IMG/VR virus record: IMGVR_UViG_3300017991_005548
Coordinates: 124,001 to 188,000 of that record
Reading direction: 5' to 3' (one strand)
DNA length: 64,000 bases
Below the pieces are notes generated by a model. It was not told where the DNA came from and searched no databases. It saw only the letters and a list, made by a program, of their open reading frames with translations. Position 1 is the first letter of the stretch. Every line of letters begins with the position of its first letter. The position numbers and the translations under genes are program-made. Shown in pieces: positions 2-53,600 of this stretch.

Positions 2-793
2 CTCATTGGCAGACCCGATAAGCTGATGGAAGTTCCCGACATTTTTAATGAAGATGTTGCTGATCTCTTCAAAGGTCCAACCAAGTTTCAAAAACCTTTT
101 GATAGCAAAAAGAAAAGCGTCTCTATGTGCTTGTGGTGCATCTTCGGCATAATCGCCAAAAACAGAAGGGTCAAAGAAGTATTCCCGATAACCATTCAGG
201 ATATGCCATTCCTTTTCTGGGGCTGATGGTTGAGGATCGCTACCGATATTAATTAAAATAAAGGGAGCCTTCTGAGAGAGAAGATTCTCAGGCTTATCCC
301 GCTTACGTCCATCAATGTCTATCTCTTCATAAAAATTAATCCCTTTGGTATCATGTGGAGAGACATAGCCCCCAAGAACAGTACCTTCTCGATCATCCTG
401 GGTTCTCATTTTTAAGTGGGGAGGGAGGGCCTTCGCAACAGATGGCATACGATTGAGATTAACCTCAATGATTGGAATCCTGTCAACGTTTTCTCCACCA
501 AGATCTTTATGGATTAGATCCTTGATATTTTTGAAGCCATCAAGATACCGTACTCTTAAAGATGAGAAGGGCGATCCATAAATGATAGGTTCTTTTGAGT
601 AAGTTCCAAAAGTCTCAACGACCTTATCTTTGATCTTGTCAAAGAGTTCTTCAAACTGATAGTTAGTGAAATAATCTTTGTTGATAACATAGAACCTTCC
701 AGAGTCGATATCATAACAGACCTGTAGAAGGTGTTTGGCATCGAATCCCTTGAACTGCTCCTTAAGAAGCTCCAAGGCGGTTTTTGCATTCAT
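2..793 (-). CDS. Hypothetical protein, 3' end runs off the window (not in the supplied ORF track)
   Basis: Manual translation from ATG at 793 gives MNAKTALELLKEQFKGFDAKHLLQVCYDIDSGRF...GNFHQLIGSANE, 264 open codons with no stop before position 1. It is co-oriented with all other genes. Confidence 0.85.
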   Translation of the reverse strand, partial: MNAKTALELLKEQFKGFDAKHLLQVCYDIDSGRFYVINKDYFTNYQFEELFDKIKDKVVETFGTYSKEPIIYGSPFSSLRVRYLDGFKNIKDLIHKDLGGENVDRIPIIEVNLNRMPSVAKALPPHLKMRTQDDREGTVLGGYVSPHDTKGINFYEEIDIDGRKRDKPENLLSQKAPFILINIGSDPQPSAPEKEWHILNGYREYFFDPSVFGDYAEDAPQAHRDAFLFAIKRFLKLGWTFEEISNIFIKNVGNFHQLIGSANE

Positions 794-11589: not shown

Positions 11590-14500
11590 TTAATTAACTT
11601 CTGGCTGAATCAGAGGTAAAATCTCTGAACTTCCTTTCTTTGTAGAGAAGATTTCTCCACCTGTTGTACCTGCTACTGTTTGTCCTGACGCAGATTCAAC
11701 TCTTACTATACCATTGACTTCTAAGTTGCCTTCAACGAAGTCATTTAGGTCAGCTATATTCTCCCAGGTATTCCCATCATCCTCACTATTATAAATGAAA
11801 CTGCTTGAACCCACGACCAGAATATTATTTTGGTCTTTTTTCATATCGGAAACGACATCGATTAATGCAGTGTTTCTGTGAGTATGTTGAGAAGGCAACC
11901 CTCTAATCAGATAATCTTCCACCTGGATTGTTTCAACTTGATTGTTGCGTACCATGTGCTCATGTGTATTCGAAAATTCGTCTCTCAAAACCTTTACCTG
12001 AACAGTATTCGCAACAAAATAAGCGTTACTTGCAACGATCTCTAGTTTTATGGTTGTCGAGTCGATTACTGATTTGATAAAATTGGTTTCTGATTTATTC
12101 GCAGAAGATATGATAGTAATCTTATCTCCATTAACCATATTAGTTGTATCCTCAACCTTAATCGTTGAGTCTCCCAACTCAATATCTTCTGTGACAACAT
12201 GTGTACTTGTTACAAAGTCATCATAATATATATTCTTTGTATAGCCATAATTAGTGGCGTTGATTTCCCAACTCCAAGTCTCAGAAATTTTGATATTGTT
12301 GTATTCGGTGAAGTCCCAATTAGTATTGTTGAGTAACTTAACGGTCATTGTTGTCGCTGTATGCTGAACTACCTCACTAAAATATTCAACTCCAATTTCC
12401 AATGGGTTCCAGAATCGAATTCTTGCATCTTTGAAAAGAGTTCCATCTTTTTGAACCAATGCATTGTTAAACAAGCTTGTATCAGAGACTTCAAACTTAA
12501 CAGTGGCATTTAGAACCTGTTCAAAAGAAGCTATCGATCCACTAACAAATCCACCAACCAAATCCAAATCATGATAATGGGATGAATCCGTAGAAGTAAT
12601 TTTGTTATTGAAAGAAGATAATGGTTGGTAAATCGGACCAGTTAATCTAAATACATCGTCAGACCCTATAATCAACCCCACAGGAGTTGTTATTATTTCA
12701 GTATTAATTAAGCTAGAGAAGTCATTTAGTATGATCTTATTCCTAGAATTCTGATAAACTGTCATGCCTTCTATCAACGCGGCATCACTATCACCATTGG
12801 TAACTTGGAAATCAAAATCAACCAAGAAATTATCAACAACATTTTGGGTAAAAACTACGTCAAGGTTAACTTTTCCACTACTGTCAATCCCTACGAATGA
12901 TTGCCCAGGTATGATATCTTCATTAGTAGAATCTGGAGTCTCAGCATTGTAGGGGGTGATAGTTCCGTCAATGATTATCTGATTTGACGTATTAGAAACA
13001 ACTGTGTACTCTTTGCCAAGATTTCCATTTTGATCAGTTGATACGTAAATTTTTCCGTTAGCCAATTGATTGTTTTGCGTGAGGAAGTCAAAATCAACAT
13101 CAAGAACTGACCTATCTCCAACAAATTTTATTCTCTTGCCAACATACGTTAACCAAATAGCTACGAATTCAGTTTCCAGTTCTACAGTTATTTCTCCACC
13201 AATTGTCCTAGAAGAGTTTTCCGCGATAGTGTACCCAGCTACAATAGGCAAGTCTACAACATAAAGTGTTCTTCCTTTGTATTGATTTGCTGAAATAGTA
13301 TCTGACGCTTCAATTGACAGAACTACCGCATTATTAACAGGGTTGACAGAAATCGATTTTATTAAGCCAGATACATCGATATTAGTTACCTGTCCTGGGA
13401 ATCCAACAGACCAAATCTGACCATCATAAGGGAACTCACCTGTTGTAGTTTGACTATCTTCGTAAACTCCGATATCTGTACCAAATAATATATTTCCATT
13501 GTCAGCTTCTACCATATCGTTTACAACAACTGGGTAAACTTCAAATGCCAAATTACCACTCTGGCTTTGGATAGTTTCATTAGCCTCTCTGCCAAGAACT
13601 ACAATAGATGAATCAAATCCTGAGTTGAAAATCACCCTACCACTGAAGATAGGAGTGTCGTTCCCTTCGGCAAAAATGGAGATGTTGCGTTTGTCCAATT
13701 CTCCGTCTGCATATCTAAAGTCATTTGGATATGTATAGGATACTGACATAATGGTATGTCCAAAGGTTGAAACTTTGGATGACTGAATTGTTCCCCTAAC
13801 TTCTTCAAACTTCCTATACGTACTCCATACCTTACCCAAGTCGGAACTTCTAAGAATATAGTGAATCACATTACTCAGGTCCGTTCCTGCGGCACTAGCG
13901 AGAATCCCACCAGTTGATATCGGCAAAAAGTTTACGATGTTTACGTTTTCAACTGTAGCATCAAACAATCCAGAGGTCCATACAAAATCACCAAGGTATG
14001 GGGTGTAAGCAATTTTATTCTTCCCTCCAACTAGCAAAGTATTGGTCAGGTCAACGTTACCAAGGTTTTCCTCTCCATCAAACTGTTGCCACCAAGACCC
14101 CATAGTTAATCTAACACTTGCGATTGTTTCTGGATCTTCTTCAAAAGGAGGAGAAACCTGGATAGAGTTTGGAGTAGCTTTTACAATAACATAACTTGTG
14201 TTATTTTTAGGGTTCGATGGATCACTTATAGTTTCTATCTTAACTGCTCTATTTGGTACTAACTCTGAGTAAATTCCCCCAGCCGCTTTGATAATACCAA
14301 CTGTTGGATCTCCCTCAATATTTTTAAATGAAGCTTCATGAGGTGGAATAACAACAAAACTATCTTCAGGCCATCTTAAGGACATAGAGAGTGCAGGGAA
14401 TCTGACGGCTTCCTGATCTTGAAGCGTCCATGTGATCATATCCTGAGTCAAATAAACCCCGTTATCAGTTGCAACTAACAGATTCTCATCCCCAAAGACA

Positions 14501-17500
14501 CTCATATCATAAACAGGTCTTTTCAACCCCCAAACATAGAACCAGTTCGCGTTTACATTGTCGTTTCTTCGCGCCCAGAAAACTCCGATATCAGTTCCAA
14601 CAATAATATTACCAGAGAATGTACCTGTTCCAATAAGGATCTTGTTGATTGACGTTGCTCCCTTAGCTTCAAATGGGCTTTGGAAGTTAACTAAACTGTA
14701 TGCTTCGCTATTCTCAATGTCTATGTAATTCCCATAATAGTTTTCATCCGCAGGATTTTCAGAATAATGGAAGTCATAGAAAAGGCTCTGAATCATCTCA
14801 GAATCGATTTCGGGGTAGACATACCTTACAGCTTGAGTCAACTGTAAAAGGTTGCTCAGATAGGCGTTATTTAGCTCATATGGCCTTTGATCGCTTTCAT
14901 ACGACAGCCGATCTTCTATTTCTTCATGAGTGTTGGTGCCAATGTTGGTTAAGAAACTATCATATATGTTCAATCGGATAGCCGAACTTGCATCTAAATT
15001 AGGCAATTTATAAACAGTGGCAGGAGTATCTATTTTTATTGTTGATCTCGGAGAGAATGAAATTATGTTATCTGAAACAGATGTGATTGTTCTATAAAGA
15101 TAAGATGTCTCAACTTCTCTCTCTTCAACCGATCTTTGAGCTTCAGCTTCTGCGGCTTGTTCCGCACTTGCGCCACTTTCTCCTCCAGCCACAACAGTTT
15201 CTGTTGGTGGAGGAAGCTCATCTTTCCGAATCGAAATGCGATCTCCAGCCTGAAACTGACTTGCGTCCTCAACTTCAATGAAATTATCATAAACAGATAA
15301 ACCGTTGGTCAAACTTGATGTTCCACTGAAGTCTACCAATCCTAATGTCGGATCAACTGTGAAACTCCATCCTCTAGATGCTCTATTATCGATATCTGTT
15401 TTGGTTGAGTAAATAAGTTTACTGTTAATATAGATATCATATGGCACATCTGTTGGCCATCCTCCACTCTCGGCATACCACTTATCGAAATTAACGAGAG
15501 TTGTAATAGTTTGATCAGTTACAGTAATCTCTTTTAAATAGAATGTTTTGCTTCTATTCCCATAAGCGTAATCGAAATATACATTTTCTCCGTTAAGAGT
15601 TAGTGATGGCAGTGGAGATCCAGAAAAACTAAACTTACTTGTAAACGATGAAGAATATTCATAGACTTCATTAACTGAGCCAACAAAGAATGATTCTAAA
15701 TCATATGACACTTGGAAAGAATATGCAACAATATCACTAATTTTATTCCACCCCCCAGAGTATCTATAAATGCCGTCTGGTTTAGAAAGATACATAATAC
15801 CATCATATGCAAAGAACTTGCCATTCTCACCTTCTTCTGGAAGATTGCAAATAAAATTCCATGTCTCTCCACTATCTTTTGATCTATAAACCTTTGTATT
15901 TGATACGGCATAGAGAGTTATGACTAAGCTATGGGTATGGCCATTGGCACTTTGAACAGTCCAATCGGTTACGTCATGAGTATGCCCATCTTCCAATTCA
16001 AGAGTTCCATTCCCATTAATGTTAACATCAAGAGTATGAGTGTGACCAAGCTTAGTTGTAACTTTCATAGACTTAAAATCTTGTTCAATCTGGTTGTAGT
16101 TACCTTCGAGTTTCTCAACCCAGGTCTTTCCTTGGTCTTCTGTTTTGAAAATTCCATCAGAGGCACAATATACGTTATTACTTGTGAAAACCAGTATGTC
16201 ATTAATGTTGGGAGATTCTCCTGGCCTTGTTGTATTAGAAAGTATTGTACTTCTATTGTGAGATCTGAGAACCAGAACTCCATTATTTGAAGCAACCCAA
16301 ACACTTCCTTCTTCATCTTGTTCTGCATTTTTGAACACCCCTACATTTGATGGAGTATTTGGGGCTTCCCAACTAAGATAGAAGTTATCTTGTAAGTTGA
16401 CATTTGTTGCAACGATATCTTTTCCCACAGTCAAGATTTTATCTGTTGTAACACCATTTCTTGTAATTTCTTGAACCTCGATTGATATCGCTGGGATACC
16501 ATCAAGATATCTCTCGACCTTGGCGACTGTTTTAACTGAGCCTGGATTCTCAGCAATCCTTTCTTGAACTTCTTCACTTTCTGGATCTAACAACTCATTT
16601 GTCTCTACGTCTCTAAGTTGAACCGCTATTAATGTCTCGTCATCTCCAACTTCATCAAAATCTTTAAGGTCAGTTATTTTGTAGTTTGGAACTGGAATAT
16701 ATGAAAGTTTTTGAATCATTGTTTGATCGGCATCACTATTTGATTCAGATTTCCCTACAATAAGATATGAATCTCCAGTTTCTGTAAGAGTTTCTTCCGC
16801 TAAAGCAATTTGCAGTGTGTAGATATCACTTGTAATCTTCAACGGAGTGCCAGTTTCTATCTCATAATTTTGCTTTGCTTTTTCGAACATTTCTAATAGA
16901 TCTGTTCCTGTCTCATAAAAAGGCAGATCGTTAATAACAAAAACAAACGCATCATCATTTGGGATCATGATTAAATCATCGGATGTTCCAACATATAGAT
17001 TACCGAATCGATCTTCAAACATAGAGTATGCAACTTTAACATCTCCAATAACTGATTGAATGATTTCATGAGTGTGAGAAGAATCCGTTTCAGTAGTTTC
17101 GTTTATGTCATTCTGCCAATCAAGCAATCCCTGACTCTCTGCATCCTCAACAACCCCATCTTGTACTGAGTGCAAATGGGCAACCAAATACGTTTCGTCA
17201 TCCTGCCCTACAGCATAGTATACAGGCTCGTCGTTGATGTATGTTTGTTCAGTAAGACCTGTATTCTCTTCATTTACCAATAAATTATGGTAATGGTCTA
17301 ATGTATTTTCTGTTACTGATGGTGTTACCAAGAAATTTATACCATCATTACTGATTACGGGATAGTTAAATGGTGAGAATGGTTCGTCTGTTCTTCCAAC
17401 ATGAGACAAGAATGGGATCTGAGAAATCTCAAATACTCCAGATGCGATTTTCTGAGCATTGACAAAAAAGATATTCTCATTCCTGATAACTCCTGTTACC

Positions 17501-19131
17501 TCTGAATTCCCAAGGATTTCAATCGTAACATGATCTGCCTCTAATCCTACCGTCTTTTGATAGTCGAGTAAAGTAACTTCAATATTTCTTGCCGCGTCAG
17601 GAGTGAAAACAAACGTGTCGTCTTTATCTCTTAACAATGCCTCGGCAGTTACACTTTGACTTTTCAAATCTGCAAATCCAGCAATGGACTGAGTTTCTTC
17701 ATCAAAGAATACAAATGGATTCGTGTTAATATCAACGCTTGCAAAAGAAGCATTGAATTCTGTTATCATGTTTAACATGAATCTATAAACACTACTTTGC
17801 TGTTCAGAATATTGGAATCTTGTTCCCTCATATTCAAAGTCAACACCATAAGTTTTGGTTATCCCTCCAATTATTCCTGTAAGAGAAATCGTCTTGGTTG
17901 TTGGGTCGGCAGTAATATCGTCAGATGTCTCGTCACCAACTGGGATGTTGTTTACATAAACTATGTATTGGCTTGATTCATCCCATACAAAATTTGAGAT
18001 ATCTGGGAGAACGTGAGTGTGGTCTTCAACAGTCCCAGTTGTAAACTCCTGAGTTTGCATTTCGTTCTCAACTATCTTATGATAGTGATTGTCAGCCGTT
18101 CCAACAATACCAACTGTTTGACCGTTACCATCAGTATCTATTGTAAATGTATGTCGATGTCCTTCGACAGTATCTGTTAGCTGACTTTCTGTTATGCTGA
18201 AATTTCCTCTTCTGCTTTCTGGGTTATAAGAGGTAAGAACTGCGTTTCTGAAATCTGTTTCAAGATTGATTCTTGCAGGATCGTATGATGCAGACCCACC
18301 ATGGTGATGGGCGGCAACAATTTGATTTGCATAACTGGTGATTGTAGATTCAAGATTCTTCAAAGTATTAACATCAGAAGTGTCAATAGAAACAACCTCA
18401 TTTCCTCTTGTTGTTACCAAACCTAAGAGTACTTTAGCTGGGGCCGCAGAAAAGTTTGGTGCTGAGTTAAAAGTAACTTCAGTAAAATGATTCGCAGAGT
18501 CATCTCTAAACTGATATGAGTATATCGCATCCATTTGAGTGTCGTAAGCTTCTTTTGCAACAATATAGTCATTAAAATCGTTGTAATCATTGACTGACGG
18601 TTCGGGGATCAAATATGGAGGGTAATCAGCCAAAGGCGGATAGAAATTAGAATATTTTCTAGTAACCCAAATATAAGTATCTGCATTGTTGTTTAAAGTT
18701 ATGACTTCTGGTATGACAACTTTTACGTAGGCATTTTCAATTGGTTTTGTTGGATTGAATGTTGGGTCATATTCTTGAACGACTGCGATATAGGCATCTG
18801 CTTCTGCATCAGTCATATCTTCTTCTGGGGCTTCTTGAAGTTTTACGACTTCAACTTCTCGATCTCCGCTAACCATACTTGATCTTTGTTTGACTGTATA
18901 TGGGCTTTCAGCGAAGTATCCATTAATAATTCCTCTACCTGGAAGTATTTGAACTGTTGTATCTGTTAGATGTTCTATTTCCCATCCTTCAATGACACCA
19001 ACACCAACGACTCCAACATATGACTCCATATTGTAGTCAACTGTGACGAATCTCTGGTATTCTGACTGAGCAGAATATGCTCCCCCTCTTGGGAAGTATT
19101 CTAATTTGAATCTTGGTGCAATTTTAGGCAT
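11590..19131 (-). CDS. Giant (2513 aa) tail fibre/appendage protein with Asp-box (BNR) beta-propellers and multiple HxH clusters; paralog of 39010-43377
   Basis: Asp-box-like motifs FKTEDQGKTW, YRSKDSGETW, YLTQDMITW, LRSSDLGKVW and YNSEDDGNTW. At least 12 HxH motifs. Its N-terminus aligns with that of the 1455-aa protein. Confidence 0.8.
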   Translation of the reverse strand: MPKIAPRFKLEYFPRGGAYSAQSEYQRFVTVDYNMESYVGVVGVGVIEGWEIEHLTDTTVQILPGRGIINGYFAESPYTVKQRSSMVSGDREVEVVKLQEAPEEDMTDAEADAYIAVVQEYDPTFNPTKPIENAYVKVVIPEVITLNNNADTYIWVTRKYSNFYPPLADYPPYLIPEPSVNDYNDFNDYIVAKEAYDTQMDAIYSYQFRDDSANHFTEVTFNSAPNFSAAPAKVLLGLVTTRGNEVVSIDTSDVNTLKNLESTITSYANQIVAAHHHGGSASYDPARINLETDFRNAVLTSYNPESRRGNFSITESQLTDTVEGHRHTFTIDTDGNGQTVGIVGTADNHYHKIVENEMQTQEFTTGTVEDHTHVLPDISNFVWDESSQYIVYVNNIPVGDETSDDITADPTTKTISLTGIIGGITKTYGVDFEYEGTRFQYSEQQSSVYRFMLNMITEFNASFASVDINTNPFVFFDEETQSIAGFADLKSQSVTAEALLRDKDDTFVFTPDAARNIEVTLLDYQKTVGLEADHVTIEILGNSEVTGVIRNENIFFVNAQKIASGVFEISQIPFLSHVGRTDEPFSPFNYPVISNDGINFLVTPSVTENTLDHYHNLLVNEENTGLTEQTYINDEPVYYAVGQDDETYLVAHLHSVQDGVVEDAESQGLLDWQNDINETTETDSSHTHEIIQSVIGDVKVAYSMFEDRFGNLYVGTSDDLIMIPNDDAFVFVINDLPFYETGTDLLEMFEKAKQNYEIETGTPLKITSDIYTLQIALAEETLTETGDSYLIVGKSESNSDADQTMIQKLSYIPVPNYKITDLKDFDEVGDDETLIAVQLRDVETNELLDPESEEVQERIAENPGSVKTVAKVERYLDGIPAISIEVQEITRNGVTTDKILTVGKDIVATNVNLQDNFYLSWEAPNTPSNVGVFKNAEQDEEGSVWVASNNGVLVLRSHNRSTILSNTTRPGESPNINDILVFTSNNVYCASDGIFKTEDQGKTWVEKLEGNYNQIEQDFKSMKVTTKLGHTHTLDVNINGNGTLELEDGHTHDVTDWTVQSANGHTHSLVITLYAVSNTKVYRSKDSGETWNFICNLPEEGENGKFFAYDGIMYLSKPDGIYRYSGGWNKISDIVAYSFQVSYDLESFFVGSVNEVYEYSSSFTSKFSFSGSPLPSLTLNGENVYFDYAYGNRSKTFYLKEITVTDQTITTLVNFDKWYAESGGWPTDVPYDIYINSKLIYSTKTDIDNRASRGWSFTVDPTLGLVDFSGTSSLTNGLSVYDNFIEVEDASQFQAGDRISIRKDELPPPTETVVAGGESGASAEQAAEAEAQRSVEEREVETSYLYRTITSVSDNIISFSPRSTIKIDTPATVYKLPNLDASSAIRLNIYDSFLTNIGTNTHEEIEDRLSYESDQRPYELNNAYLSNLLQLTQAVRYVYPEIDSEMIQSLFYDFHYSENPADENYYGNYIDIENSEAYSLVNFQSPFEAKGATSINKILIGTGTFSGNIIVGTDIGVFWARRNDNVNANWFYVWGLKRPVYDMSVFGDENLLVATDNGVYLTQDMITWTLQDQEAVRFPALSMSLRWPEDSFVVIPPHEASFKNIEGDPTVGIIKAAGGIYSELVPNRAVKIETISDPSNPKNNTSYVIVKATPNSIQVSPPFEEDPETIASVRLTMGSWWQQFDGEENLGNVDLTNTLLVGGKNKIAYTPYLGDFVWTSGLFDATVENVNIVNFLPISTGGILASAAGTDLSNVIHYILRSSDLGKVWSTYRKFEEVRGTIQSSKVSTFGHTIMSVSYTYPNDFRYADGELDKRNISIFAEGNDTPIFSGRVIFNSGFDSSIVVLGREANETIQSQSGNLAFEVYPVVVNDMVEADNGNILFGTDIGVYEDSQTTTGEFPYDGQIWSVGFPGQVTNIDVSGLIKSISVNPVNNAVVLSIEASDTISANQYKGRTLYVVDLPIVAGYTIAENSSRTIGGEITVELETEFVAIWLTYVGKRIKFVGDRSVLDVDFDFLTQNNQLANGKIYVSTDQNGNLGKEYTVVSNTSNQIIIDGTITPYNAETPDSTNEDIIPGQSFVGIDSSGKVNLDVVFTQNVVDNFLVDFDFQVTNGDSDAALIEGMTVYQNSRNKIILNDFSSLINTEIITTPVGLIIGSDDVFRLTGPIYQPLSSFNNKITSTDSSHYHDLDLVGGFVSGSIASFEQVLNATVKFEVSDTSLFNNALVQKDGTLFKDARIRFWNPLEIGVEYFSEVVQHTATTMTVKLLNNTNWDFTEYNNIKISETWSWEINATNYGYTKNIYYDDFVTSTHVVTEDIELGDSTIKVEDTTNMVNGDKITIISSANKSETNFIKSVIDSTTIKLEIVASNAYFVANTVQVKVLRDEFSNTHEHMVRNNQVETIQVEDYLIRGLPSQHTHRNTALIDVVSDMKKDQNNILVVGSSSFIYNSEDDGNTWENIADLNDFVEGNLEVNGIVRVESASGQTVAGTTGGEIFSTKKGSSEILPLIQPEVN

Positions 19132-24585: not shown

Positions 24586-24932
24586 TATTCTTTACCTTTT
24601 AATTCTACGAAACCTGGAGGGAGATCGACAGGAACACTAGGTTTATGATCCTTAAAATCTTTATTCCCCGAATCCTGTTCTCTATCCTTGATCATAACGT
24701 CATTTGGTCCTTGAGCAGTCATATCAACTTTTTCTCTTATGACAACACAAAAATCAAGATCTTCTATCTCTGGGATTTGACAATTTGTTCCAGAAATGAC
24801 AAACTCGATTTCCCCCTCATCTGTTTTAATAACATCTGCAAAATGATCAATTGTCATTGCTTCAGAAACCTCAACCTCTTCTGAATCAATTAATGATAGA
24901 GATTTATTAAATTTTATGATAGTTATCGCCAT
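24585..24932 (-). CDS. Small hypothetical protein in the tail cluster (likely start MAITIIKF)
   Basis: ATG at 24932 has a GGAG RBS and lies just after the upstream stop. Its TAA overlaps the next ATG. Confidence 0.65.
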   Translation of the reverse strand: MAITIIKFNKSLSLIDSEEVEVSEAMTIDHFADVIKTDEGEIEFVISGTNCQIPEIEDLDFCVVIREKVDMTAQGPNDVMIKDREQDSGNKDFKDHKPSVPVDLPPGFVELKGKE

Positions 24933-24934
24933 AA

Positions 24935-28210: not shown

Positions 28211-28256
28211 AAGTTACACTCATATGATCATAGAATATCTAAACATTCTTCAATTT

Positions 28257-29348: not shown

Positions 29349-29384
29349 AATAATTCTCCATGTTATGCTAATAAATCCTTAAAC

Positions 29385-29392
29385 ATTATACA
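29385..29392 (-). promoter_or_regulatory. TGTATAAT -10-like element upstream of the sulfotransferase
   Basis: The same octamer lies in the intergenic gaps at 50605-50612 and 59330-59337. Confidence 0.45.
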
Positions 29393-29409
29393 TGAAGGGC
29401 TAGGTCAGA

Positions 29410-30147: not shown

Positions 30148-30158
30148 TTGATTACTCC

Positions 30159-30599: not shown

Positions 30600-30609
30600 A
30601 GTTTTCTCC

Positions 30610-33663: not shown

Positions 33664-33671
33664 TCTTTACC

Positions 33672-36632: not shown

Positions 36633-36645
36633 TATTCACTCCTAC

Positions 36646-39009: not shown

Positions 39010-42000
39010 TTATGTACTTAGTAAGACATTACCACTTATCATTGGTCTAACATCTCTTGGCTTAACCAAGTAATTCTCTCCGAAAGACCATAATATATTT
39101 CCCCAAGAATCGACTTTTATCAATCTACTGGTAAAAGGTGACTCCAACCCATCGCTCTCCAATATATAATACAAATCTCTTGACGATAATCTTTGTCTTG
39201 TGACGTTTATTTTGCCAGTCAGGATATCTGGATATACAAACCAGTCAAATTCTCCATCATCAATGAACTCAAACGAGTAAGTTTCTCCTGGGTCTAATAC
39301 AGGAGATGTAAACACCGTACCATACAAAGTGAGGTCTGGGTCTTGTTGGAATAAATCATAGGTAGTTGTTCCAGAATAAATGGTAATAGGAGAAGAACTG
39401 CTATTTCTCCAAACAACAGTAGTACCCTGTCTGACAAATATGTTATTCTCACTAACAGAATCATTGTATATGTCGATAACTCTTTGCTCCTGAGGAACTA
39501 TATGGAAATCTGGTATGTATTTATCTGAGTCAAACTGCCATTCAATTTCTGGAGTCTGAGTTTCTAGGTCAGTATAAATAATAATGGCTCTCTGCCTTAT
39601 CGAATCACCAATCAACAACTCATATGCTCCGATCTTTTCGGCACTACCCAAGATTACTTTGGCCCTTTCCTTGCTTTCTGCAAATCTTGCGGCATTATTT
39701 GAGAATACTGTGTCTCCACTCTCATCTAACTGAACAACACTATGGCCATTCAAATATTTCGTTCCGAAAATTAACTGATTCGTTGGGACATCTGCCAAAT
39801 CTGGGTTAGGAGTTAAAAGATCTAGCCCACTCGCTTCTCTTGCAATATTTTCTAATCGTAAGGCGAATTCGTCTGCGTTTTCTTGTCCTGCAAGTCCATC
39901 AAGCCAAGAAGGAGATCTTAGTTTAGCAACAAGTATAGATAATTCCCCTCCTGCTAAACCACTTGTATCATCTGGAATGATTTGCAAATCTATTGGAGAA
40001 TAGATATTCTGTATGAATACATTTGCGACATCAGTATTTGTTCTAGAAGTTTCAACACTCCTGTCGTCTTCACTAACGATAGCTCCCCTGTTCATATAAA
40101 GTTTCAGAAGAGCATTGGAATTTAACCCAACAATAAACTCAGAAGTTATATCACCATGGTCATAAACCAATTGGTTTCCATCAGCATCAACAGTATAGAT
40201 TCTGATTGTATGTTTACCTGGGTCTAAATCTTCAAGAGTAATTGGTTCTGTAGAATAATAATCGATTGCTGGATCACTATCAATTTGATATTGAACATGC
40301 TGACCCGTTGGAACAACAGGAAAATTCTCAGATGTGAATTCGACAACGACAGGGTTATTAGAGTAAGTTTGATTTGGTCGGGGGTATTGTATGCTTAGAT
40401 ATGGGTTGGTGTATGTAGATCTACGAACGAAATTTAATGTTGCAGATGCCTCGTCATTTGTTTGCTCAACATCATTATAATCCACCAAGATAATATCAAC
40501 TTCATGATCTCCAGTACTCAATCCAGAAAATGTATAATTATCCTCATAGATAATAAAACTAGTACCACCATCAATAGACAACTTAATTCCATACTCCCCT
40601 TCATCACTCCCTAATTCTGCATTTCTCAATAAAAAATTCACCTTAACAGAACTGCTAGACGTTCTGAAGTTCTGATATGGTGCTCCAACAGCAATTGCTG
40701 GATCTGTTTGACTCAAAACGTTATTAAGAGCCGTTTTGTCTGCTCCCTGTAGTGTGATTTTCAGAACATGAGACTTGAACGAGAAATGACTTGAGAATAT
40801 CGCTTCTTCATCTGTTGACGTTGATAAATCTCCCCAAATTTCATATTTCGCTTGAGGGATGCCAACCAATTCAGTTGTAGAGTCCGATAAATTGAATCTG
40901 TGCGCTCCAACCTTTAAATAGATCTTGTCCATGTCAAATGTTGCCGAAGCGTTATAGATATTCGTTAAATTACTGTCAAATACTATGTAAAGTATCCCCT
41001 GCTCTTCATTATATATACTATGAAGAACTGTCATGTCATCTTCAGTCGTTTCTGCTGTCTCTTCAGTTTCTTCAGTTGTCTCTGTTGTATTAGATCCTGG
41101 GCCGTTCTCTTCAAATCCATAAGGATCATTTGGAGCTTCCAAGAAACTTCCATAAAAACCAATTTCCAAATTTCCATATCTATCCACTTTCACAATTCTA
41201 TCGTTGTCAGTATCTGCCAACCATAATGAACCTGCGTCCCCTCTTGCAACTCCAGATAAATAGCCGAATGAAGGAGTAATGTCGTTCATTGCTTGATAAG
41301 TCGTTGTTGGTAATGTTGATCCTCCAAAGGCGAAAGCAACATCAAAATCACTCTCTAGCTGACCTGCACTTCCATCTGTCGCAAAGTAATAGGTCCCGAT
41401 ATCATCGACATCTGCAACCTGTATTGATCCTGGATCTGTAGTTGTGTCTATGTTGAAGAGCTTGCCCGTTTCCCAATCTGTTTGAGAAGTAAACTCAAAT
41501 TCAGCATCTTCATCACTAACATAGAAGTCTAGATAAAGCTTCTTCATACAAGCGGTCCTACTATTTGTAATAGAGGACTCAAAATATGCTTCGATCTCAA
41601 TATACTTATAAAGTGTTCCGCTTGTAGGGATAGTTGTTCCGCTAACAGTCGTATATTCTGACCATTCAGCTACAGCCAACCCAGCTTCTGTATTAGAAAC
41701 TCTACTTCTAACTTTGAAGGCCACTCCAGTTGACGATGTGTCTGTAGGAATTACTGTATTCCATCTCAGTCTCCAGTAATCGACTAGCAAATCGTTCCCG
41801 TAAATAACTCTTACATAACCATCATCTTCATAGAAATTTCCAGTACTTAAGATAAAGTCATCAATATTAAGGTCGAATGGTTTTGAATTATCCCAACCAA
41901 GTTGGGTAGAGGTATATATTGCCATTTGATTTACAGATGATCGAATATACCCTCTTAAATCAACTCTAACTTCCTGCCAACCATTTTCTAAAGTATCAAC

Positions 42001-43377
42001 ATTAATGGTTGGAGTGTTTCTTTCAAGAGCCAAGAAATAAGAATTCTGAATACCTGCAACTGAATCGCTAAAGTAGAAAACCCAGTCTCCATGTTCAACA
42101 TCTTCTGTCTTCAAATAGAAGGTAAGGAAATCGTAGTCACTCCAGTCTTGAGCATCGAAATCTTTTCTAATAACCAAAGCCATCTCGGTTTCTTCATTAG
42201 TAACGTCTATTTTCCCACTTGTTGGAGCAGAGACATACTCTGAACTATCCAGAGACAAATTCCCAGTTGTAGTTGAGCTAAGATCTTCTGTGAATACGGT
42301 CCATTCATCAATATTATTAAATTCATCTAGGACTAACTCATTGTTAGTTGTGGCAAGACAAACTGAATCTCCGTCAATAAATACATTACTGTTGGTACTG
42401 TCACTAAAATCATCTTCAGTATCCCAAATTCTTGTGTATGTAGTGAATCCAGCGATTGGAGTCATCGTTATAGTGTGTTCACCACCCTCGGAAAATGTTC
42501 TATAATCAACTTCAGCAGTTGTATTGATCATGTCAACGAAATCATCTGGGCTGATACCTGGAATAAAAGCAATCTCATTTACCAAATACTCATCAATATC
42601 TGGATAAACGTGTTTCAGAGCCAATATGAGTTGCAACAAATTGATTGTGGAGACCTCTCCCATCTTTTTGTTGTCAGTAATATTAAGAGTCTCTACAAAC
42701 GCATCTAATTGAGCATGAGTTAATGTTCCCTGTTCTGTTAATCCTTCGATATGGTCAATCTTTGGTATTCTATTCTCATCAAGAACCCCAGTTTTGATTT
42801 TACTTGCGTCTAAATCTGGAATGTTTTGTTGATTTAAAACTCCTTGGACTTCACTTGAAAGATCAATTGGAGATGGATTACCAGTACCACCGATATGCCT
42901 ATGTTCTTCAACAGCTTGATTGATTAGGGCTTGGAATCCAAGAACTTCTCGTCCATCTGTTGATATAGCTGTTACAGAAACATCATCAGTTGTGACAGAT
43001 CCAAGGTAAAGACTTTCATCATCTGTCTCATGGAAGGACAAATATGCAGAAAAGTTAACATTTTGACTCCAATAACTATCTTCTTGAATCTCAGCGTAGA
43101 CATACATTGTTGTATTTTGATTCAATCCTTCAATAGTAAATGAATCAGTTGATTCTACAGCTACAAAAGCCACATGTCCTGATCCTGGGCCAACTGTAAT
43201 ATTAAGACCCTCGGATACGGTAAGGCCCCATCCTGTTTTTATTCCGTTACCCAGTACATCGAACACTGCAAAAAGCTGAGCATCTAGAGATTCCCATCTC
43301 TGCATCTCAGTTGCGGCATCGGTAGTATCATCTTGTTCGAAATACGATAACTGATATTTATTAGTTCTTCTACTCAT
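39010..43377 (-). CDS. Tail fibre/baseplate-associated protein (1455 aa) with attachment domain, CBM-like sandwich, NHL blade, Ig-like pair and cupredoxin-like fold
   Basis: N-terminal GNGIKTGW....LNITVGPGSG fibre-attachment-like motif; QDWSDYDFLTFYLK...GWQEVRVDL; LWLADTDNDRIV; GTTVVWRN...SPVLDPGETYSFEF..GEFDW. Confidence 0.78.
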   Translation of the reverse strand: MSRRTNKYQLSYFEQDDTTDAATEMQRWESLDAQLFAVFDVLGNGIKTGWGLTVSEGLNITVGPGSGHVAFVAVESTDSFTIEGLNQNTTMYVYAEIQEDSYWSQNVNFSAYLSFHETDDESLYLGSVTTDDVSVTAISTDGREVLGFQALINQAVEEHRHIGGTGNPSPIDLSSEVQGVLNQQNIPDLDASKIKTGVLDENRIPKIDHIEGLTEQGTLTHAQLDAFVETLNITDNKKMGEVSTINLLQLILALKHVYPDIDEYLVNEIAFIPGISPDDFVDMINTTAEVDYRTFSEGGEHTITMTPIAGFTTYTRIWDTEDDFSDSTNSNVFIDGDSVCLATTNNELVLDEFNNIDEWTVFTEDLSSTTTGNLSLDSSEYVSAPTSGKIDVTNEETEMALVIRKDFDAQDWSDYDFLTFYLKTEDVEHGDWVFYFSDSVAGIQNSYFLALERNTPTINVDTLENGWQEVRVDLRGYIRSSVNQMAIYTSTQLGWDNSKPFDLNIDDFILSTGNFYEDDGYVRVIYGNDLLVDYWRLRWNTVIPTDTSSTGVAFKVRSRVSNTEAGLAVAEWSEYTTVSGTTIPTSGTLYKYIEIEAYFESSITNSRTACMKKLYLDFYVSDEDAEFEFTSQTDWETGKLFNIDTTTDPGSIQVADVDDIGTYYFATDGSAGQLESDFDVAFAFGGSTLPTTTYQAMNDITPSFGYLSGVARGDAGSLWLADTDNDRIVKVDRYGNLEIGFYGSFLEAPNDPYGFEENGPGSNTTETTEETEETAETTEDDMTVLHSIYNEEQGILYIVFDSNLTNIYNASATFDMDKIYLKVGAHRFNLSDSTTELVGIPQAKYEIWGDLSTSTDEEAIFSSHFSFKSHVLKITLQGADKTALNNVLSQTDPAIAVGAPYQNFRTSSSSVKVNFLLRNAELGSDEGEYGIKLSIDGGTSFIIYEDNYTFSGLSTGDHEVDIILVDYNDVEQTNDEASATLNFVRRSTYTNPYLSIQYPRPNQTYSNNPVVVEFTSENFPVVPTGQHVQYQIDSDPAIDYYSTEPITLEDLDPGKHTIRIYTVDADGNQLVYDHGDITSEFIVGLNSNALLKLYMNRGAIVSEDDRSVETSRTNTDVANVFIQNIYSPIDLQIIPDDTSGLAGGELSILVAKLRSPSWLDGLAGQENADEFALRLENIAREASGLDLLTPNPDLADVPTNQLIFGTKYLNGHSVVQLDESGDTVFSNNAARFAESKERAKVILGSAEKIGAYELLIGDSIRQRAIIIYTDLETQTPEIEWQFDSDKYIPDFHIVPQEQRVIDIYNDSVSENNIFVRQGTTVVWRNSSSSPITIYSGTTTYDLFQQDPDLTLYGTVFTSPVLDPGETYSFEFIDDGEFDWFVYPDILTGKINVTRQRLSSRDLYYILESDGLESPFTSRLIKVDSWGNILWSFGENYLVKPRDVRPMISGNVLLST

Positions 43378-50626: not shown

Positions 50627-53600
50627 TTAGGCCATTTTTTCGAAAGACATTCTTAGCCTACTATTCTTTGTCATTTCGGCATCAATTTTATCACTGAGTG
50701 TTATTTTAAGCTCACCTAAAACTTCTTTCCCGCCACTTTCACTTGGGCCTCCATCGAGTCCAGCCATCTCTCTTCCCGAAGATCTTCTGTATTCTGCTTG
50801 TGTTGCCGCATCTGATACAATATCGCTTCTTACAACGCCACCCTTCCCTTTGCCTACTGCTCTAGGAGTTTGGGGTTTAGCTTTACCCCCTCTGTGAACA
50901 ATAATACCTTGATTTCCACCAAGTGCTGTTGGGACTCTACCTCCAGTACTTTCTGGGGCATTCGCTCTAGCATCGGCATAAGCCTTTTCTCTTTCTTTTA
51001 CTCTAGCGGCTTCGGCTTCGGCTTCAGCTTGTCGATCTGGGTCATATCGCACATGTCCACCTAGTGCAGTTGAACCCCACTTAAGTGCAGATTTATCTGC
51101 CCCTTTCAATTTTTCTAATTCGGATCTAGCGGCGGCTCTCTCTGCTGATGTAGCATCACGATCAAGAGCTTTGCTTTGGAGTTCTTTCATTCGAGTTATG
51201 TTTTGGCTATATGGTGTTGCAGGCAGTTTTTTATTAACCTTTGGCATACTAAGATAGTTAACACCTTCTCCCGCTGGCCTTGTATCTCGTCCTGCCCTAC
51301 TTTTTGCAAGTCCCTTTCTAGCAATTTCTCTTGCTTCCTCATCCGACATTACTTTTTGGCCAATTGACGCTGTTGGGATTTTTGGAACACCCATCTTTTC
51401 GATTGGTCCTGTAAGATCCACTGTCCCAATGTCTTCTGGAACTGAAGCGTATCTGTCCAATACTGGAGTAGGTGTTGGAGTAGGTGTTGGAGTAGGTGTT
51501 GGAGCTTTGGAAGAAGGTCTAGTGGCTTTAGTGGATTTAGGTAAAACGTTCTTCTTGACTTCTTCTGGAATCGCTTCCTTTCCCATTTGCCTGGCAGTTG
51601 CAAGTCTAATCCCTTTTGAACGAGAAAGTTTCCCTTTTTCAGCTTTGGTCAGGAAGTCCTCCCATTCTATTCCTTTCTTGAATTGAGGTCCTTGAGCCTG
51701 TTTGGCAGGTTCCTTCTTAACCCTTCTAGATTGTTGACTTCCTGGCTCTGGAATGCCTTTTCGTTTTCTATATTCGGCATCCACCTTATCCATATACTCT
51801 TCCTCTCTTCTTATGGCTTCAGCACTAGCTTTCTTCCTTTTTTCGGCTCGATCTTGTCTGTTTTTTCGGATAATTTTCGACACTTTGGCTTTCCCATGAG
51901 CGATAGCTTCTTTATCATCAGTATATCCCATAACAGATGCCATTATGTCTCTAAATTCAGCTTCCTGTTCTTTAAGGCTTTTACTTCTGAAAACCTCTTC
52001 TTTCATCAATTCTTCAAAGACATACTCAGCTTGTGCCGCAATAGCGCTTCTTTTATCTTGTCCTTCTCCTTTTTGTAGGAGAACATGCATCCTTTCTTGT
52101 GCCGTGCCAACAAGCGATCCTCTTTTTATAGATAGTGCCTCCCCCATGCGAATAGCTTTGCTCATATCCTCTTGTTTCTTAGAACCAGAGGACATACTTA
52201 CTGCAACCTCTTTATGGGCTTTCATCAACTCTGTCGCATTTTCACTTACGGCATGGACTTTTTTAATAATTTCATCCTCTGTCATCCCTAAAGATTTGGC
52301 AAGTCTTTCTGTACTTTTCGATATTGTGTAAGCATTAAGGTTACCTTCTTTAATTAAATTGTCAAGGTGATTCATCTCCTCCTTGACTATTTGAGATTGT
52401 ATTGTCTCTGCCATTCTACTATCACGTTTGCGCAATTCTTTTATAGCAGTTCCCATACTATATTCAAGTCCCATCATCTCATAAGAATTTTCTTCAGCAT
52501 TCTTCATGGAGCTTTGGATATTCATGGCCAAACTAGCAATGGCTTGAGCCTCTACCCCCTTAAATTCGTTCATCCTTGCATCAAGTTGATTCCACGACTC
52601 AATCTGAGTACTCATTATGTATTCCTGCTCTCTGGAAAGCTTCTTTATTTCTGATGTCGCAGTAGCAGTTCCCCCTTTAGGAGTGGCTCCTCCAGTTACA
52701 GGTTTTGCGGCTGGTTTTCTAGTAGGTCCTGTCGCAGGTGCAGGAGCGCCTTCCATTGGTCCTCTATGTCCTCCCCATGACAAGAATTGTTTTACATCTA
52801 CTCCCCAATGCATTGATCCATCTGAAAGCGTTTGACTCGCGCCAGAAAATCCTTTAGCAATATCTCTTTGCCTTCTAACAATTGCCTTGCTAACTTTGAC
52901 CTGTTCCTTCTGAAGAGATTTGAGTGTTTTAGAATCGTTTCTCCCAGAATCGTTAAGCTCTGTCATCTTATTGGAGATCTCTTGGCTATATTTGAGAAGT
53001 CCCTGCATTTTTGGATCTTTCTGCATCTGTCTCAACATAACTGGAGGTATGCCCATTGGACCTGGAGCGGCAGATGGCGCAAAAACATTTGTAGCTTCTG
53101 GAGTCGTTCCACGAGATCCACCTGCGACCGCTCCTGCAAAAGCAGTTACCGTATTTGCCCCTCTTCTAGTCCTTCTTTCTTGACCTGGAGCACCTTTACC
53201 ACCTTCTCCTGTTCTTACATCGATCTTAACGGATTGGAGGTTATTGCCACCACCAGACCAAGTATGAAGTGCTCGACTGAACTCACTTTCCATAAACCCT
53301 TGTTTATTGATGTTTTGTTCTAAAATTGCTCCTTTTGTATTCTCATGCTCTCTATTATCACCTATGTATCCAGCAGTTGGAGCGGCACCTTTGCCCATCA
53401 TATGTTGTTGGAAAGCCTGGGCAGATCTTCCATAACCAAAGATGTCATCAACTTGAGCACCAGCAAATGCTCCCGCTTGGAATCCGCCAATGGTGTATTT
53501 TGAAGGTGCGGCCATTCTAGCTTTTGAAGCCTCAGACCCTTGAATAGTATATCCACCAAGAGCCATCGTATTAAGAAAGTCAATCCCTGTTACGCCTTTT

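What the first reader, a model, noticed from the sequence alone, without database searches (positions are those of the whole stretch)
14780..19131. Paralogous fibre scaffold is contiguous in one gene but exploded by nested insertions in the other
The first ~270 aa of the 1455-aa protein (42570-43377) map in order onto five separated blocks spread over ~1450 aa of the 2513-aa protein: YQLSYF..GNGIKTGW/FKLEYF..GVGVIEGW; LGSVTT..HRHIGG..PIDL/LGLVTT..HHHGG..RINL; ASKIKTGV..RIPKIDH/AQKIASGV..QIPFLSH; LTEQGTLTHAQLD/LTNIGTNTHEEIE; NLLQLILALKHVYPDID/NLLQLTQAVRYVYPEID. Propellers and HxH modules were inserted between them. The two proteins may co-assemble as a hetero-oligomer through this scaffold.
Basis: partly seen in the sequence, partly recalled or inferred. 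Interest (0 to 1): 0.65.

Follow-up and report, generated by a model that had tools for sequence, protein, structure and literature searches.

The report
Split and unsplit phage fibre anchors
Two giant tail-fibre genes of a huge uncultured phage share one ancient N-terminal baseplate-anchor module, unbroken in one gene and cut into ordered pieces by about 1,170 inserted residues in the other; this is a real and widespread pattern, but a variant of known phage modularity.

Summary
The first ~270 residues of the 1455-aa protein (P0002, window 39010-43377, minus strand) map in order, each piece once, onto residues 1-75, 204-296, 542-578 and 1393-1450 of the 2513-aa protein (P0001, 11590-19131, minus strand). 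Family profiles give hhalign E 1e-23, 2e-8 and 5e-8.

The shared module starts with a beta-sandwich 'shoulder' domain of the kind that anchors trimeric receptor-binding proteins to baseplates (phage p2 and 1358 RBPs, cyanophage A-1(L) long fibre, Mtd, TssK). An HxH motif, a doublet of a common short fibre repeat and a helical segment follow. A predicted homotrimer of the P0002 module scores 0.75 against 0.00 for controls.

At least 1274 protein clusters in metagenomes match the module profile. Among the best 150 it is an unbroken N-terminal unit in nearly all. The split form lies on one side of a single tree branch. It occurs together with an unbroken paralogue in all 8 related phage records long enough to judge, and the two lineages give matching trees. 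This points to an old duplication, with insertions accumulating in one copy.

The hetero-oligomer idea was not tested and has no direct support. Two separate homotrimers docked on the same baseplate are more likely. This is a new variant of a known kind, of moderate interest.

The parts
11590..19131 (-). P0001, 2513-aa fibre protein with the split anchor module
   Evidence: ORF, translation. The family has 45 clusters, nearly all 2450-2640 aa.
39010..43377 (-). P0002, 1455-aa fibre protein with the unbroken anchor module
   Evidence: ORF, translation. 198 relatives; the N-terminal 300 aa are 47-82% identical among the 120 listed.
42904..43377 (-). P0002 residues 1-158: N-terminal strand, helix and beta-sandwich shoulder domain
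   Evidence: AF2 pLDDT is about 90 over residues 50-140. The top 13 VIA hits are all RBP, Mtd or TssK shoulders, Z 5.8-9.7, followed by a drop to Z 3.7. Foldseek PDB and BFVD searches agree.
42742..42903 (-). P0002 residues 159-212: invariant HxH plus a doublet of the short fibre repeat (neck)
   Evidence: H159, H161 and G163 are invariant. The monomer model has low confidence here, but this is the best-defined interface of the predicted trimer, residues 146-207. The repeat nature is shown.
42493..42741 (-).
   Evidence: Helices at 221-231 and 237-263. Profile matches end at about 294 in most relatives.
18907..19131 (-). P0001 residues 1-75: first piece of the shoulder (block 1)
   Evidence: HMM piece 1; hhalign hit 1.
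18712..18894 (-). P0001 residues 80-140: insertion a, inside the shoulder
   Evidence: Gap in hhalign hit 1. Confidently modelled strands and helix 108-119.
18487..18651 (-). P0001 residues 161-215: insertion b, inside the shoulder
   Evidence: Gap in hhalign hit 1; helix 186-205. The same loop carries a ~630-aa insertion in relatives L022, L023 and L025.
18244..18522 (-). P0001 residues 204-296: last shoulder strands, helix and shared HxH (block 2)
   Evidence: HMM piece 2. H275, H277 and G279 are invariant. The fold spans 49..255 with 81 residues aligned to 8kec, Z 10.0.
17512..18237 (-). P0001 residues 299-540: insertion c, three invariant HxH motifs and an interrupted beta-sandwich
   Evidence: HxH at 325, 349 and 371. 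Confident model over 293-540. Beta-sandwich matches span 283..546, and a separate set of matches covers 424-523.
17398..17508 (-). P0001 residues 542-578: neck repeat doublet (block 3)
   Evidence: HMM piece 3; hhalign hit 2, E 2.3e-8. A local conservation peak of 0.68-0.71, against a mean of 0.53.
14959..17385 (-). P0001 residues 583-1391: insertion d, three HxH motifs, propeller-like region with three more HxH motifs, and further domains
   Evidence: HxH at 613, 652, 686, 1030, 1050 and 1065. Reg_prop at 701-717. Weak PDB hits, all propellers.
14782..14955 (-). P0001 residues 1393-1450: helical piece (blocks 4 and 5)
   Evidence: HMM piece 4; hhalign hit 3, E 4.9e-8. Residues 1421-1440 are the most conserved 20-residue window of the first 1500 residues, 0.84.
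50627..56860 (-). Tape measure protein (2077 aa); sets the context, as the fibre genes lie downstream of it
   Evidence: phrog_167, E 6e-18.

Best explanation
P0001 and P0002 are ancient paralogues. Both begin with the same baseplate-anchoring module: an N-terminal beta-sandwich shoulder domain of the phage RBP / TssK kind, then elements that run along a three-fold axis. These elements are a helix, an invariant HxH motif, a doublet of a common short fibre repeat and a helical segment.

Each protein most likely forms its own homotrimer. Its shoulder ring would be gripped by a loop or arm of a baseplate protein, so the virion carries two different fibre types on one adhesion device.

After the duplication, one copy (the P0001 lineage) accepted insertions at loops of the shoulder and at the joints between the axial elements. 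In this phage they add about 60, 55, 240 and 810 residues and bring in HxH clusters, beta-sandwiches and propeller-like domains. The other copy stayed compact.

Shown: the homology, the collinearity, the shoulder fold, the single-clade status of the split form, and the pairing across genomes.

Inferred: trimer state, docking mode, metal binding at HxH, and the direction of change (insertion rather than deletion).
For: Homology and order.

Shoulder fold in both proteins, from independent models:
- P0002: Z 9.7 (1yu0), 9.7 (8kec), 9.6 (4l92), 9.2 (2wzp), 8.1 (TssK 5y0e), then a drop to 3.7.
- P0001: Z 10.0 (8kec), 8.2 (2wzp), 8.1 (1yu0), 6.5 (TssK). The aligned core is spread over residues 49..255.
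- Foldseek PDB and BFVD searches agree.

Homotrimer of P0002 1-300: ipSAE 0.75 against a best control of 0.00. The runs share at least 49% of their contacts, partner pLDDT is at least 69, and the interface covers residues 5-42 and 146-207. The mark was reached by 20 of 30 solved pairs and 1 of 23 single chains; these counts hold only roughly here because three copies and my own alignment were used.

The unbroken form is the common one: 1274 clusters match at E <= 1e-3, and nearly all of the best 150 carry profile positions 1-294 in one stretch at the N-terminus.

Single origin and old age of the split form:
- It lies on one side of a branch with SH-aLRT 100 and a stem of about 2 changes per column.
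- With the distant split forms added, the support is 92.
- The same phage groups appear on both sides of that branch: G002 with this phage, and G005, G008, G009 and G010 in a separate clade on each side.

Pairing: both types occur in 8 of 14 related records, including all 3 that are at least 90% complete (one of them a second copy of this phage). The other 6 records are 8-23% fragments. The two genes are adjacent in L021-L024 and share contigs.

Insertion rather than deletion: insertion sites and sizes differ between split subtypes. The loop at profile positions ~100-110 holds 55 aa here and about 630 aa in L022, L023 and L025, and the insertion at positions 77-92 is absent there. Solved shoulders are compact.

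The scaffold pieces are conservation peaks within the P0001 family.

Literature: shoulders of p2 and 1358 RBP trimers receive a Dit 'hand', and TssK trimers are held by TssG loops (PMC7291167). The shoulder (residues 1-155) of the A-1(L) long fibre anchors to the baseplate wedge (PMC10966104).
Against: - No sequence family (Pfam, PHROGs) names the module, so the shoulder assignment rests on predicted structures only.
- The AF2 monomer models have low confidence for residues 160-300 of P0002 and for 271-291 and 543-604 of P0001.
- A pass in the trimer prediction can reflect memory of solved shoulder trimers.
- No docking partner was identified. The three genes between the tape measure and P0002 gave no PDB sequence match.
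- Whether P0001's insertions loop out of a compact scaffold or lengthen the fibre was not resolved.
- Block 3 is a generic repeat, so its positional orthology is less certain than that of the other pieces.
- Residues shared by the two families are not enriched at the predicted trimer interface.
Confidence: 0.75

Rival explanations
1. One reading: the two proteins co-assemble into mixed (2:1 or 1:2) trimers through the shared scaffold.
For: The two paralogues occur together in every sufficiently long related record and are adjacent genes in four of them. 66 of 300 module positions keep the same consensus residue in both families.
Against: - Identity is only 27.5%, across a stem of about 2 changes per column.
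- P0002's module is predicted to trimerise on its own.
- P0001 carries 12 further HxH motifs, 6 of them (in insertions c and d) invariant in its family. In solved fibres such motifs need three like chains around an axis (own knowledge of T4 gp37; see also PMC6116203). A partner that lacks these modules could not complete them.
- Shared residues are not enriched at the predicted interface.
- The solved shoulder-domain proteins that matched (p2 and 1358 RBPs, A-1(L) gp34, TssK) are homotrimers (PMC7291167, PMC10966104).
- The idea was not tested directly.
Confidence: 0.05
2. The two proteins form separate homotrimers that touch each other. They would sit as a fixed pair on one two-socket adaptor of the baseplate, as two TssK trimers sit on one TssG, or as the A-1(L) long and short fibres lie pairwise.
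For: Conserved pairing, matching trees and adjacency of the two genes. Precedents are in PMC7291167 (TssG loops hold two TssK trimers) and PMC10966104 (the short-fibre stem runs along the groove of the long-fibre shoulder trimer).
Against: There is no direct evidence of contact. No TssF/TssG-like Baseplate_J protein and no sheath was found in this genome, so the T6SS and myophage precedents may not transfer. In this phage the two genes lie about 20 kb apart with eleven called ORFs between them.
Confidence: 0.15
3. The similarity is a mosaic of common fibre motifs (HxH, the short neck repeat, a helical tag) that were acquired separately, not one ancestral module split by insertions.
For: Block 3 is a copy of a repeat that forms arrays of 14-28 matched stretches in unrelated giant proteins. 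HxH motifs are widespread in fibres.
Against: - The shoulder part alone gives E 1e-23.
- All pieces occur once and in the same order, and together they cover 251 of 300 profile positions.
- The same four-piece order recurs in distant split proteins.
- No other ORF in the genome carries any piece.
Confidence: 0.05

Closest known systems
Receptor-binding proteins of lactococcal phages p2 (ORF18; 2bsd, 2wzp) and 1358 (4l92)
   Same: An N-terminal beta-sandwich shoulder followed by a trimeric neck. Model matches: Z 9.2 and 9.6 for P0002, Z 8.2 and 8.0 for P0001. The gene lies downstream of the tape measure in a phage without detectable sheath genes.
   Different: There is no detectable sequence similarity. 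Those proteins have 260-390 residues against 1455 and 2513 here. The neck here has an HxH motif and a repeat doublet instead of a beta-prism. Nothing in p2 or 1358 resembles the large insertions.
Long tail fibre gp34 of Anabaena myophage A-1(L) (8kec)
   Same: The best structural match of both models (Z 9.7 and 10.0). Its shoulder (residues 1-155) anchors the trimer to the baseplate and is followed by a T4 gp37-like arm (PMC10966104). That phage also carries two fibre types side by side.
   Different: gp34 has 379 residues and an uninterrupted shoulder. [quoted passage not shown] A-1(L) is a myophage with wedge proteins, which were not found here.
TssK of the type VI secretion baseplate (5y0e, 6n38, 5m30) and IglD (8dql)
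   Same: The shoulder fold (Z 8.1-5.8). TssK forms trimers that are held by loops of a baseplate protein, two trimers per TssG (PMC7291167).
   Different: TssK is a bacterial secretion-system component with helical neck and head domains that bind the membrane complex. Here there is no sequence similarity to it and no TssF/TssG-like partner.
Major tropism determinant Mtd of Bordetella phage BPP-1 (1yu0)
   Same: The N-terminal beta-sandwich matches at Z 9.7 with rmsd 2.4 over 94 residues. BFVD hits labelled 'Mtd N-terminal domain' agree.
   Different: No Pfam family, Mtd_N included, reached E <= 1 on all or most of the 35 module sequences. Neither P0001 nor P0002 gave a Pfam match to a C-type lectin domain.
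HxH metal sites of trimeric fibres (T4 gp37 tip, R-type pyocin fibres, P2 spike apex)
   Same: Clustered, family-invariant HxH motifs: 13 in P0001 and one in the shared module. See PMC6116203 and PMC11705849.
   Different: Metal binding and axial placement are inferred here, not shown. The motifs come in groups of three per chain, inside otherwise unrelated domains.
'Evolved' Dit and Tal proteins of siphophages with inserted carbohydrate-binding modules (own knowledge; the theme of modular adhesion devices is reviewed in PMC7291167)
   Same: A conserved baseplate fold that tolerates whole domains inserted into its loops.
   Different: The host of the insertions here is the fibre's own anchor module, not Dit or Tal. 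The insertions are far larger (up to about 630 residues inside a shoulder of about 150 residues, and about 810 between axial elements), and an uninterrupted paralogue is kept alongside.

Membership tests
Phage RBP / TssK / Mtd 'shoulder' domain fold | A beta-sandwich at the extreme N-terminus, structurally superposable on solved shoulders | tested here: met
   Predicted models only. P0002: Z 9.7-5.8 for 13 shoulder-type chains, then 3.7. P0001: Z 10.0-4.9 for the same set, apart from three spore-appendage (F-ENA-type) chains at Z 5.8-4.8 that match the inserted beta-sandwich instead. Foldseek E-values are 4e-4 against PDB and 1e-6 against BFVD.
Phage RBP / TssK / Mtd 'shoulder' domain fold | Homotrimer with the shoulders forming a ring | tested here: inconclusive
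   The prediction supports it: ipSAE 0.75 against a best control of 0.00, at least 49% of contacts shared between runs, partner pLDDT at least 69. The mark was reached by 20 of 30 solved pairs and 1 of 23 single chains, counts that hold only roughly here. A model is not a measurement and may reflect memory of solved shoulder trimers.
Phage RBP / TssK / Mtd 'shoulder' domain fold | A loop or arm of a baseplate protein (Dit hand, TssG foot, wedge insertion) inserts into the shoulder trimer | not tested
   No partner was identified.
Phage RBP / TssK / Mtd 'shoulder' domain fold | Membership of a curated sequence family (for example Pfam Mtd_N, or PHROG RBP families) | tested here: not met
   No Pfam or PHROG family matches the module. 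The resemblance is at fold level only.
HxH metal-binding trimeric fibre modules | Recurrent HxH motifs, conserved across the family | tested here: met
   13 motifs against 0.6 expected by chance. H275/277, 325/327, 349/351, 371/373, 613/615, 652/654 and 686/688 are invariant in 30 sequences. H159/161 are invariant in 35 sequences.
HxH metal-binding trimeric fibre modules | Six histidines from three chains coordinate an ion on the three-fold axis | not testable with these tools
   This needs a trimer structure or a metal analysis.
Nested domain insertion (parent fold kept around an inserted domain) | The parent domain still folds as one unit with the insert looped out | tested here: met
   Met for the shoulder only. 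81-119 residues spread over P0001 10..262 align to compact shoulders, with confident structure in the inserted stretches.
Nested domain insertion (parent fold kept around an inserted domain) | The axial pieces (blocks 3-5) rejoin in space despite the 240- and 810-residue insertions | not tested
   A P0001 1-1500 trimer exceeds the size limits. The monomer model has low confidence at 271-291 and 543-604.

The most novel reading that the evidence does not exclude
The unbroken and the split paralogue are obligate physical partners. Their shoulder trimers would dock side by side on one adaptor, or, less likely, mix within one trimer. This would form a conserved two-fibre unit that a large clade of huge, apparently non-contractile-tailed phages has kept since an ancient duplication. 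The split copy would serve as a platform into which new binding domains are inserted without disturbing the anchor.
Probability: 0.2. Interest if true: 0.65.

Novelty: new variant of a known kind. Interest (0 to 1): 0.45.

Why it matters
The work defines an unannotated N-terminal anchor module that is widespread: at least 1274 clusters at 50% identity match its profile, and no Pfam or PHROG family names it. This gives a handle for recognising fibre and receptor-binding genes in huge uncultured phages.

The paired architecture shows where a fibre anchor tolerates whole-domain insertions: two shoulder loops and two joints along the axis. That is useful for reading phage host-range evolution and for choosing insertion points when engineering receptor-binding proteins in laboratory phages. 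It is also an unusually large example of domain insertion, with hundreds of residues inside a beta-sandwich of about 150 residues.

Tried and rejected
- GenBank phage collection: megablast of the P0002 gene and tblastn of P0002 1-300 found nothing.
- Pfam and PHROGs: no family for the module. Only Reg_prop and sub-threshold BNR and DUF matches lie elsewhere in the proteins.
- PDB by sequence with the A1 profile: one spurious hit, AKAP13, driven by a His tag-like end.
- First statistic tried: the summed score of collinear HSP chains at E <= 50 was not discriminating (real 128.5; shuffles 77 +/- 19, maximum 158.7). I replaced it by counting strong HSPs. One search timed out.
- ESM Atlas feature search: all scores were below 0.8, so they are leads only.
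- Test of whether residues shared by the two families concentrate at the predicted trimer interface: they do not (odds ratio 1.17, p 0.66). Numbering may be off by one after residue 53.
- PDB sequence searches for a docking partner among the three genes after the tape measure: nothing usable.
- Sheath (PF04984, PF17482) and Baseplate_J (PF04865) searches of the genome: no match. This is absence of these families only, not proof of a non-contractile tail.
The single complex job went to the homotrimer, and the scaffold of P0001 exists only as separated pieces; joining them would have meant handing in an altered sequence.
- Recent duplication within this phage lineage: rejected by the trees.
Full report
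**Setting.** The window is bases 124001-188000 of a 296,327-base IMG/VR virus record. All large ORFs lie on the minus strand. A tail tube gene (59434-60363; Pfam Phage_tube_2) and a 2077-aa tape measure gene (50627-56860; phrog_167) are followed by about 50 kb of very large genes. Their few recognisable domains are adhesion-type: Laminin_G_3, FG-GAP, Kre9/KNH Ig-like and BNR. The finding concerns two of these genes. P0002 (1455 aa, 39010-43377) is the fourth gene after the tape measure. P0001 (2513 aa, 11590-19131) has its start codon 19.9 kb below the stop of P0002.

- With the 290-residue N-terminus as query, the three HSPs score 35.0, 33.9 and 26.9 bits. Among 1000 shuffled queries, none had two HSPs at 25 bits or more, and none reached 33 bits.
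- Both proteins have many relatives. The word search found 198 for P0002, with the N-terminal 300 residues 47-82% identical among the 120 listed. It found 45 for P0001, nearly all 2450-2640 aa.
- Profile-profile comparison of the two families gives E 1e-23 (probability 99.6) for module positions 1-181 against P0001 1-298. Alternative alignments have cores at 170-213 with 541-582 (E 2.3e-8) and at 211-270 with 1392-1453 (E 4.9e-8).
- An HMM of the P0002-family module, run over all 1206 ORFs of the genome, hits only these two proteins. On P0001 it gives E 3e-27 in four ordered pieces, each used once: residues 1-75, 204-296, 542-578 and 1393-1450.
- Identity is 69 of 251 aligned positions, 27.5%.

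**What the module is.**
- An AlphaFold2 model of P0002 1-300 is confident for residues 1-150: a helix at 21-42, a beta-sandwich at 45-139 and a helix at 147-158. From residue 160 onward it is poor as a monomer.
- An exhaustive structural comparison lists 13 chains at Z 5.8-9.7, followed by a drop to Z 3.7. All 13 are baseplate-attached or baseplate proteins. They include Mtd (1yu0), the A-1(L) long fibre (8kec), the RBPs of phages 1358 and p2, the HFTV1 fibre, TssK, SPP1 gp22, a phi812 baseplate chain, an Anabaena CIS baseplate chain and IglD. Foldseek against PDB and against viral models agrees.
- An independent model of P0001 1-620 finds the same set (8kec Z 10.0, p2 8.2, Mtd 8.1, TssK 6.5). 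The 81-119 aligned residues are spread over positions 10..262, so the same fold is present with material looped out.
- In solved systems this 'shoulder' domain is the part by which a trimeric receptor-binding protein is held on the baseplate. The Dit 'hand' enters the shoulder trimer in p2 and 1358, and TssG loops hold TssK trimers (PMC7291167). The A-1(L) long-fibre shoulder (residues 1-155) binds the wedge (PMC10966104).
- No Pfam or PHROG family matches, so this is a fold-level assignment.

**The rest of the module lies on a trimer axis.**
- Three copies of P0002 1-300 are predicted to form a trimer: ipSAE 0.75 (runs 0.74-0.78) against a best control of 0.00. At least 49% of contacts are shared between runs and partner pLDDT is at least 69. 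The mark was reached by 20 of 30 solved pairs and 1 of 23 single chains in the calibration, which holds only roughly here.
- The interface is made of residues 5-42 and 146-207. The best-defined contacts lie within residues 161-197, most of them in 170-197, exactly the stretch that the monomer model could not place.
- This stretch holds the invariant H159-x-H161-x-G163 and a doublet of a 16-18-residue repeat.
- The large profile search showed that this repeat forms arrays of 14-28 matched stretches in other giant proteins, one of which ends in an endosialidase-type chaperone domain.
- Block 3 of the finding is therefore one doublet of a generic fibre repeat. Its position in the order is conserved, but it is the weakest piece as evidence of common descent.

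**What was inserted in P0001.**
- Insertions a and b (about 60 and 55 residues) sit in two loops of the shoulder.
- Insertion c (299-540) holds three invariant HxH motifs and a confidently modelled beta-rich unit. Its beta-sandwich matches span 283..546 with only about 80-90 residues aligned, and a separate set of matches covers 424-523. This suggests an insertion within the insertion.
- Insertion d (583-1391) begins with three more invariant HxH motifs. It then has a Reg_prop match above the Pfam cut-off, BNR-like motifs and a third HxH triplet between two of them. Its only PDB sequence hits, all weak, are beta-propellers.
- Altogether P0001 has 13 HxH motifs where 0.6 are expected; P0002 has one, the shared one.
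- Within the P0001 family the four scaffold pieces are local conservation peaks. Residues 1421-1440 are the most conserved window of the first 1500 residues (0.84 against a mean of 0.53).

**How general is it, and which form is older?**
- A profile search of 1.84 billion representatives finds 1274 clusters at E <= 1e-3 (196 at 1e-30). Among the best 150, nearly all carry positions 1-294 in a single stretch at the N-terminus of proteins up to 1684 residues long.
- On a tree of 102 modules, the P0001 family is one side of a branch with SH-aLRT 100 and a stem of about 2 changes per column. P0002's family is nested among the other unbroken modules. The two genes are therefore not a recent duplicate pair.
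- Scanning IMG/VR gave 15 loci with the unbroken module. Searching their 14 records with the P0001-family profile showed a split-type gene as well in 8 of them. These include all three records that are at least 90% complete, one of which is a second copy of this phage. The six records without one are 8-23% fragments.
- In four records, a 536-546-aa unbroken gene lies directly upstream of an 1809-1877-aa split gene. Two further contigs carry both types.
- These distant split genes keep the order of the pieces but differ in where the extra material sits. They have no insertion at profile positions 77-92. They carry about 630 residues in the loop at positions ~100-110, where P0001 has 55. They have about 75 residues between pieces 2 and 3 and about 570 between pieces 3 and 4. 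Apart from one extra motif in L023, their only HxH is the shared one.
- With them added, all split modules lie on one side of a branch (SH-aLRT 92) and all 50 unbroken ones on the other. The same grouping of phages appears on both sides: G002 with this phage, and G005, G008, G009 and G010 apart from them.
- The simplest reading is one old duplication, joint inheritance of both copies, and stepwise gain of insertions in one copy. The tree is unrooted, so the direction rests on two points: the differing insertion sites, and the compact shoulders of all solved relatives.

**Interpretation of function.**
- I take both proteins to be homotrimeric fibres or receptor-binding proteins, held on the tail tip by their shoulder rings. 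The unbroken copy is a conventional anchor-plus-variable-tail protein. The split copy is a version whose anchor has become a platform for added domains.
- No sheath or Baseplate_J family was found in the genome. Together with the gene order after the tape measure, this makes siphophage-type docking (p2 or 1358) the nearer analogy. This is absence of three families only.
- The conserved pairing leaves open a weaker form of partnership, in which two different trimers sit side by side on one adaptor.

**Limits.**
- All structural statements rest on predictions.
- Residues 208-300 of the module were not placed confidently in any model.
- The docking partner is unknown.
- Only the best 150 of the 1274 clusters could be inspected.
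- The two trees used a short search with SH-aLRT support only.

**Verdict.** The insertion reading is supported. The hetero-oligomer reading is unsupported. This is a new variant of a known kind (shoulder-anchored phage receptor-binding proteins with modular additions), of moderate interest.

Noticed in passing
window 50627-56860 (-): The tape measure protein has 2077 residues. At the usual ~1.5 A per residue (own knowledge) this implies a tail of about 300 nm. The gene also stands out in composition: GC 0.425 against ~0.38 elsewhere, and AT skew about -0.2.
   Followed up: no
whole record G000; also G001 and the contig lengths: The record is classed as a 296-kb 'provirus'. Yet identical P0001 and P0002 also lie on a 476,248-base IMG/VR record and on a 524,692-base contig, and relatives sit on contigs of 470-512 kb. 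The true genome may be a phage of about 0.5 Mb trimmed by the provirus caller, rather than a prophage.
   Followed up: partly
whole record G000: No sheath (PF04984, PF17482) or Baseplate_J (PF04865) match was found in a genome of this size, although tube and tape measure genes are present. This may be a huge phage with a non-contractile tail, which would be unusual.
   Followed up: partly
window 28257-29348 (-): A sulfotransferase-domain protein (Pfam Sulfotransfer_1 and Sulfotransfer_3, E ~1e-6) is encoded in the middle of the fibre gene block.
   Followed up: no
window 22147-39003 (-): A second set of paralogies links the fibre genes: 24935-28210 with 30610-33663 and with 34494-36632, 22147-24585 with 30610-33663, and 34494-36632 with 36646-39003 (BLASTP E 1e-9 to 1e-24). 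They share FG-GAP and Kre9/KNH Ig-like domains.
   Followed up: no
window 3671-11587 (-): A 2638-aa ORF directly downstream of P0001 has no Pfam match at all. The P0001-family profile touches it weakly at its HxH/propeller region (G001 341989-342147).
   Followed up: no
window 855-2966 (-): A 703-aa protein at the end of the block has a calcineurin-like phosphoesterase domain (Metallophos, E 1.6e-9).
   Followed up: no
proteins P0196, P0215, P0243, P0244, P0260, P0286, P0303, P0308: Giant metagenomic proteins (1011-3752 aa) carry 14-28 matched stretches of the 16-18-residue repeat that forms the neck doublet of the module. The 3 of these 8 proteins that were scanned against Pfam gave no match covering the repeat. 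P0196 ends in a Peptidase_S74 chaperone domain.
   Followed up: partly
P0001 residues 325-373, 613-688, 1030-1067, 2185-2418: The HxH motifs come in four groups of three per chain, plus the single shared one at residue 275. It was not resolved whether each triplet gives three stacked axial sites or one site within a chain.
   Followed up: no
P0002 C-terminal region; relatives P0087, P0114, P0119: Some database sources name relatives of P0002 'plastocyanin', which hints at a cupredoxin-like domain near the C-terminus. This was not examined.
   Followed up: no
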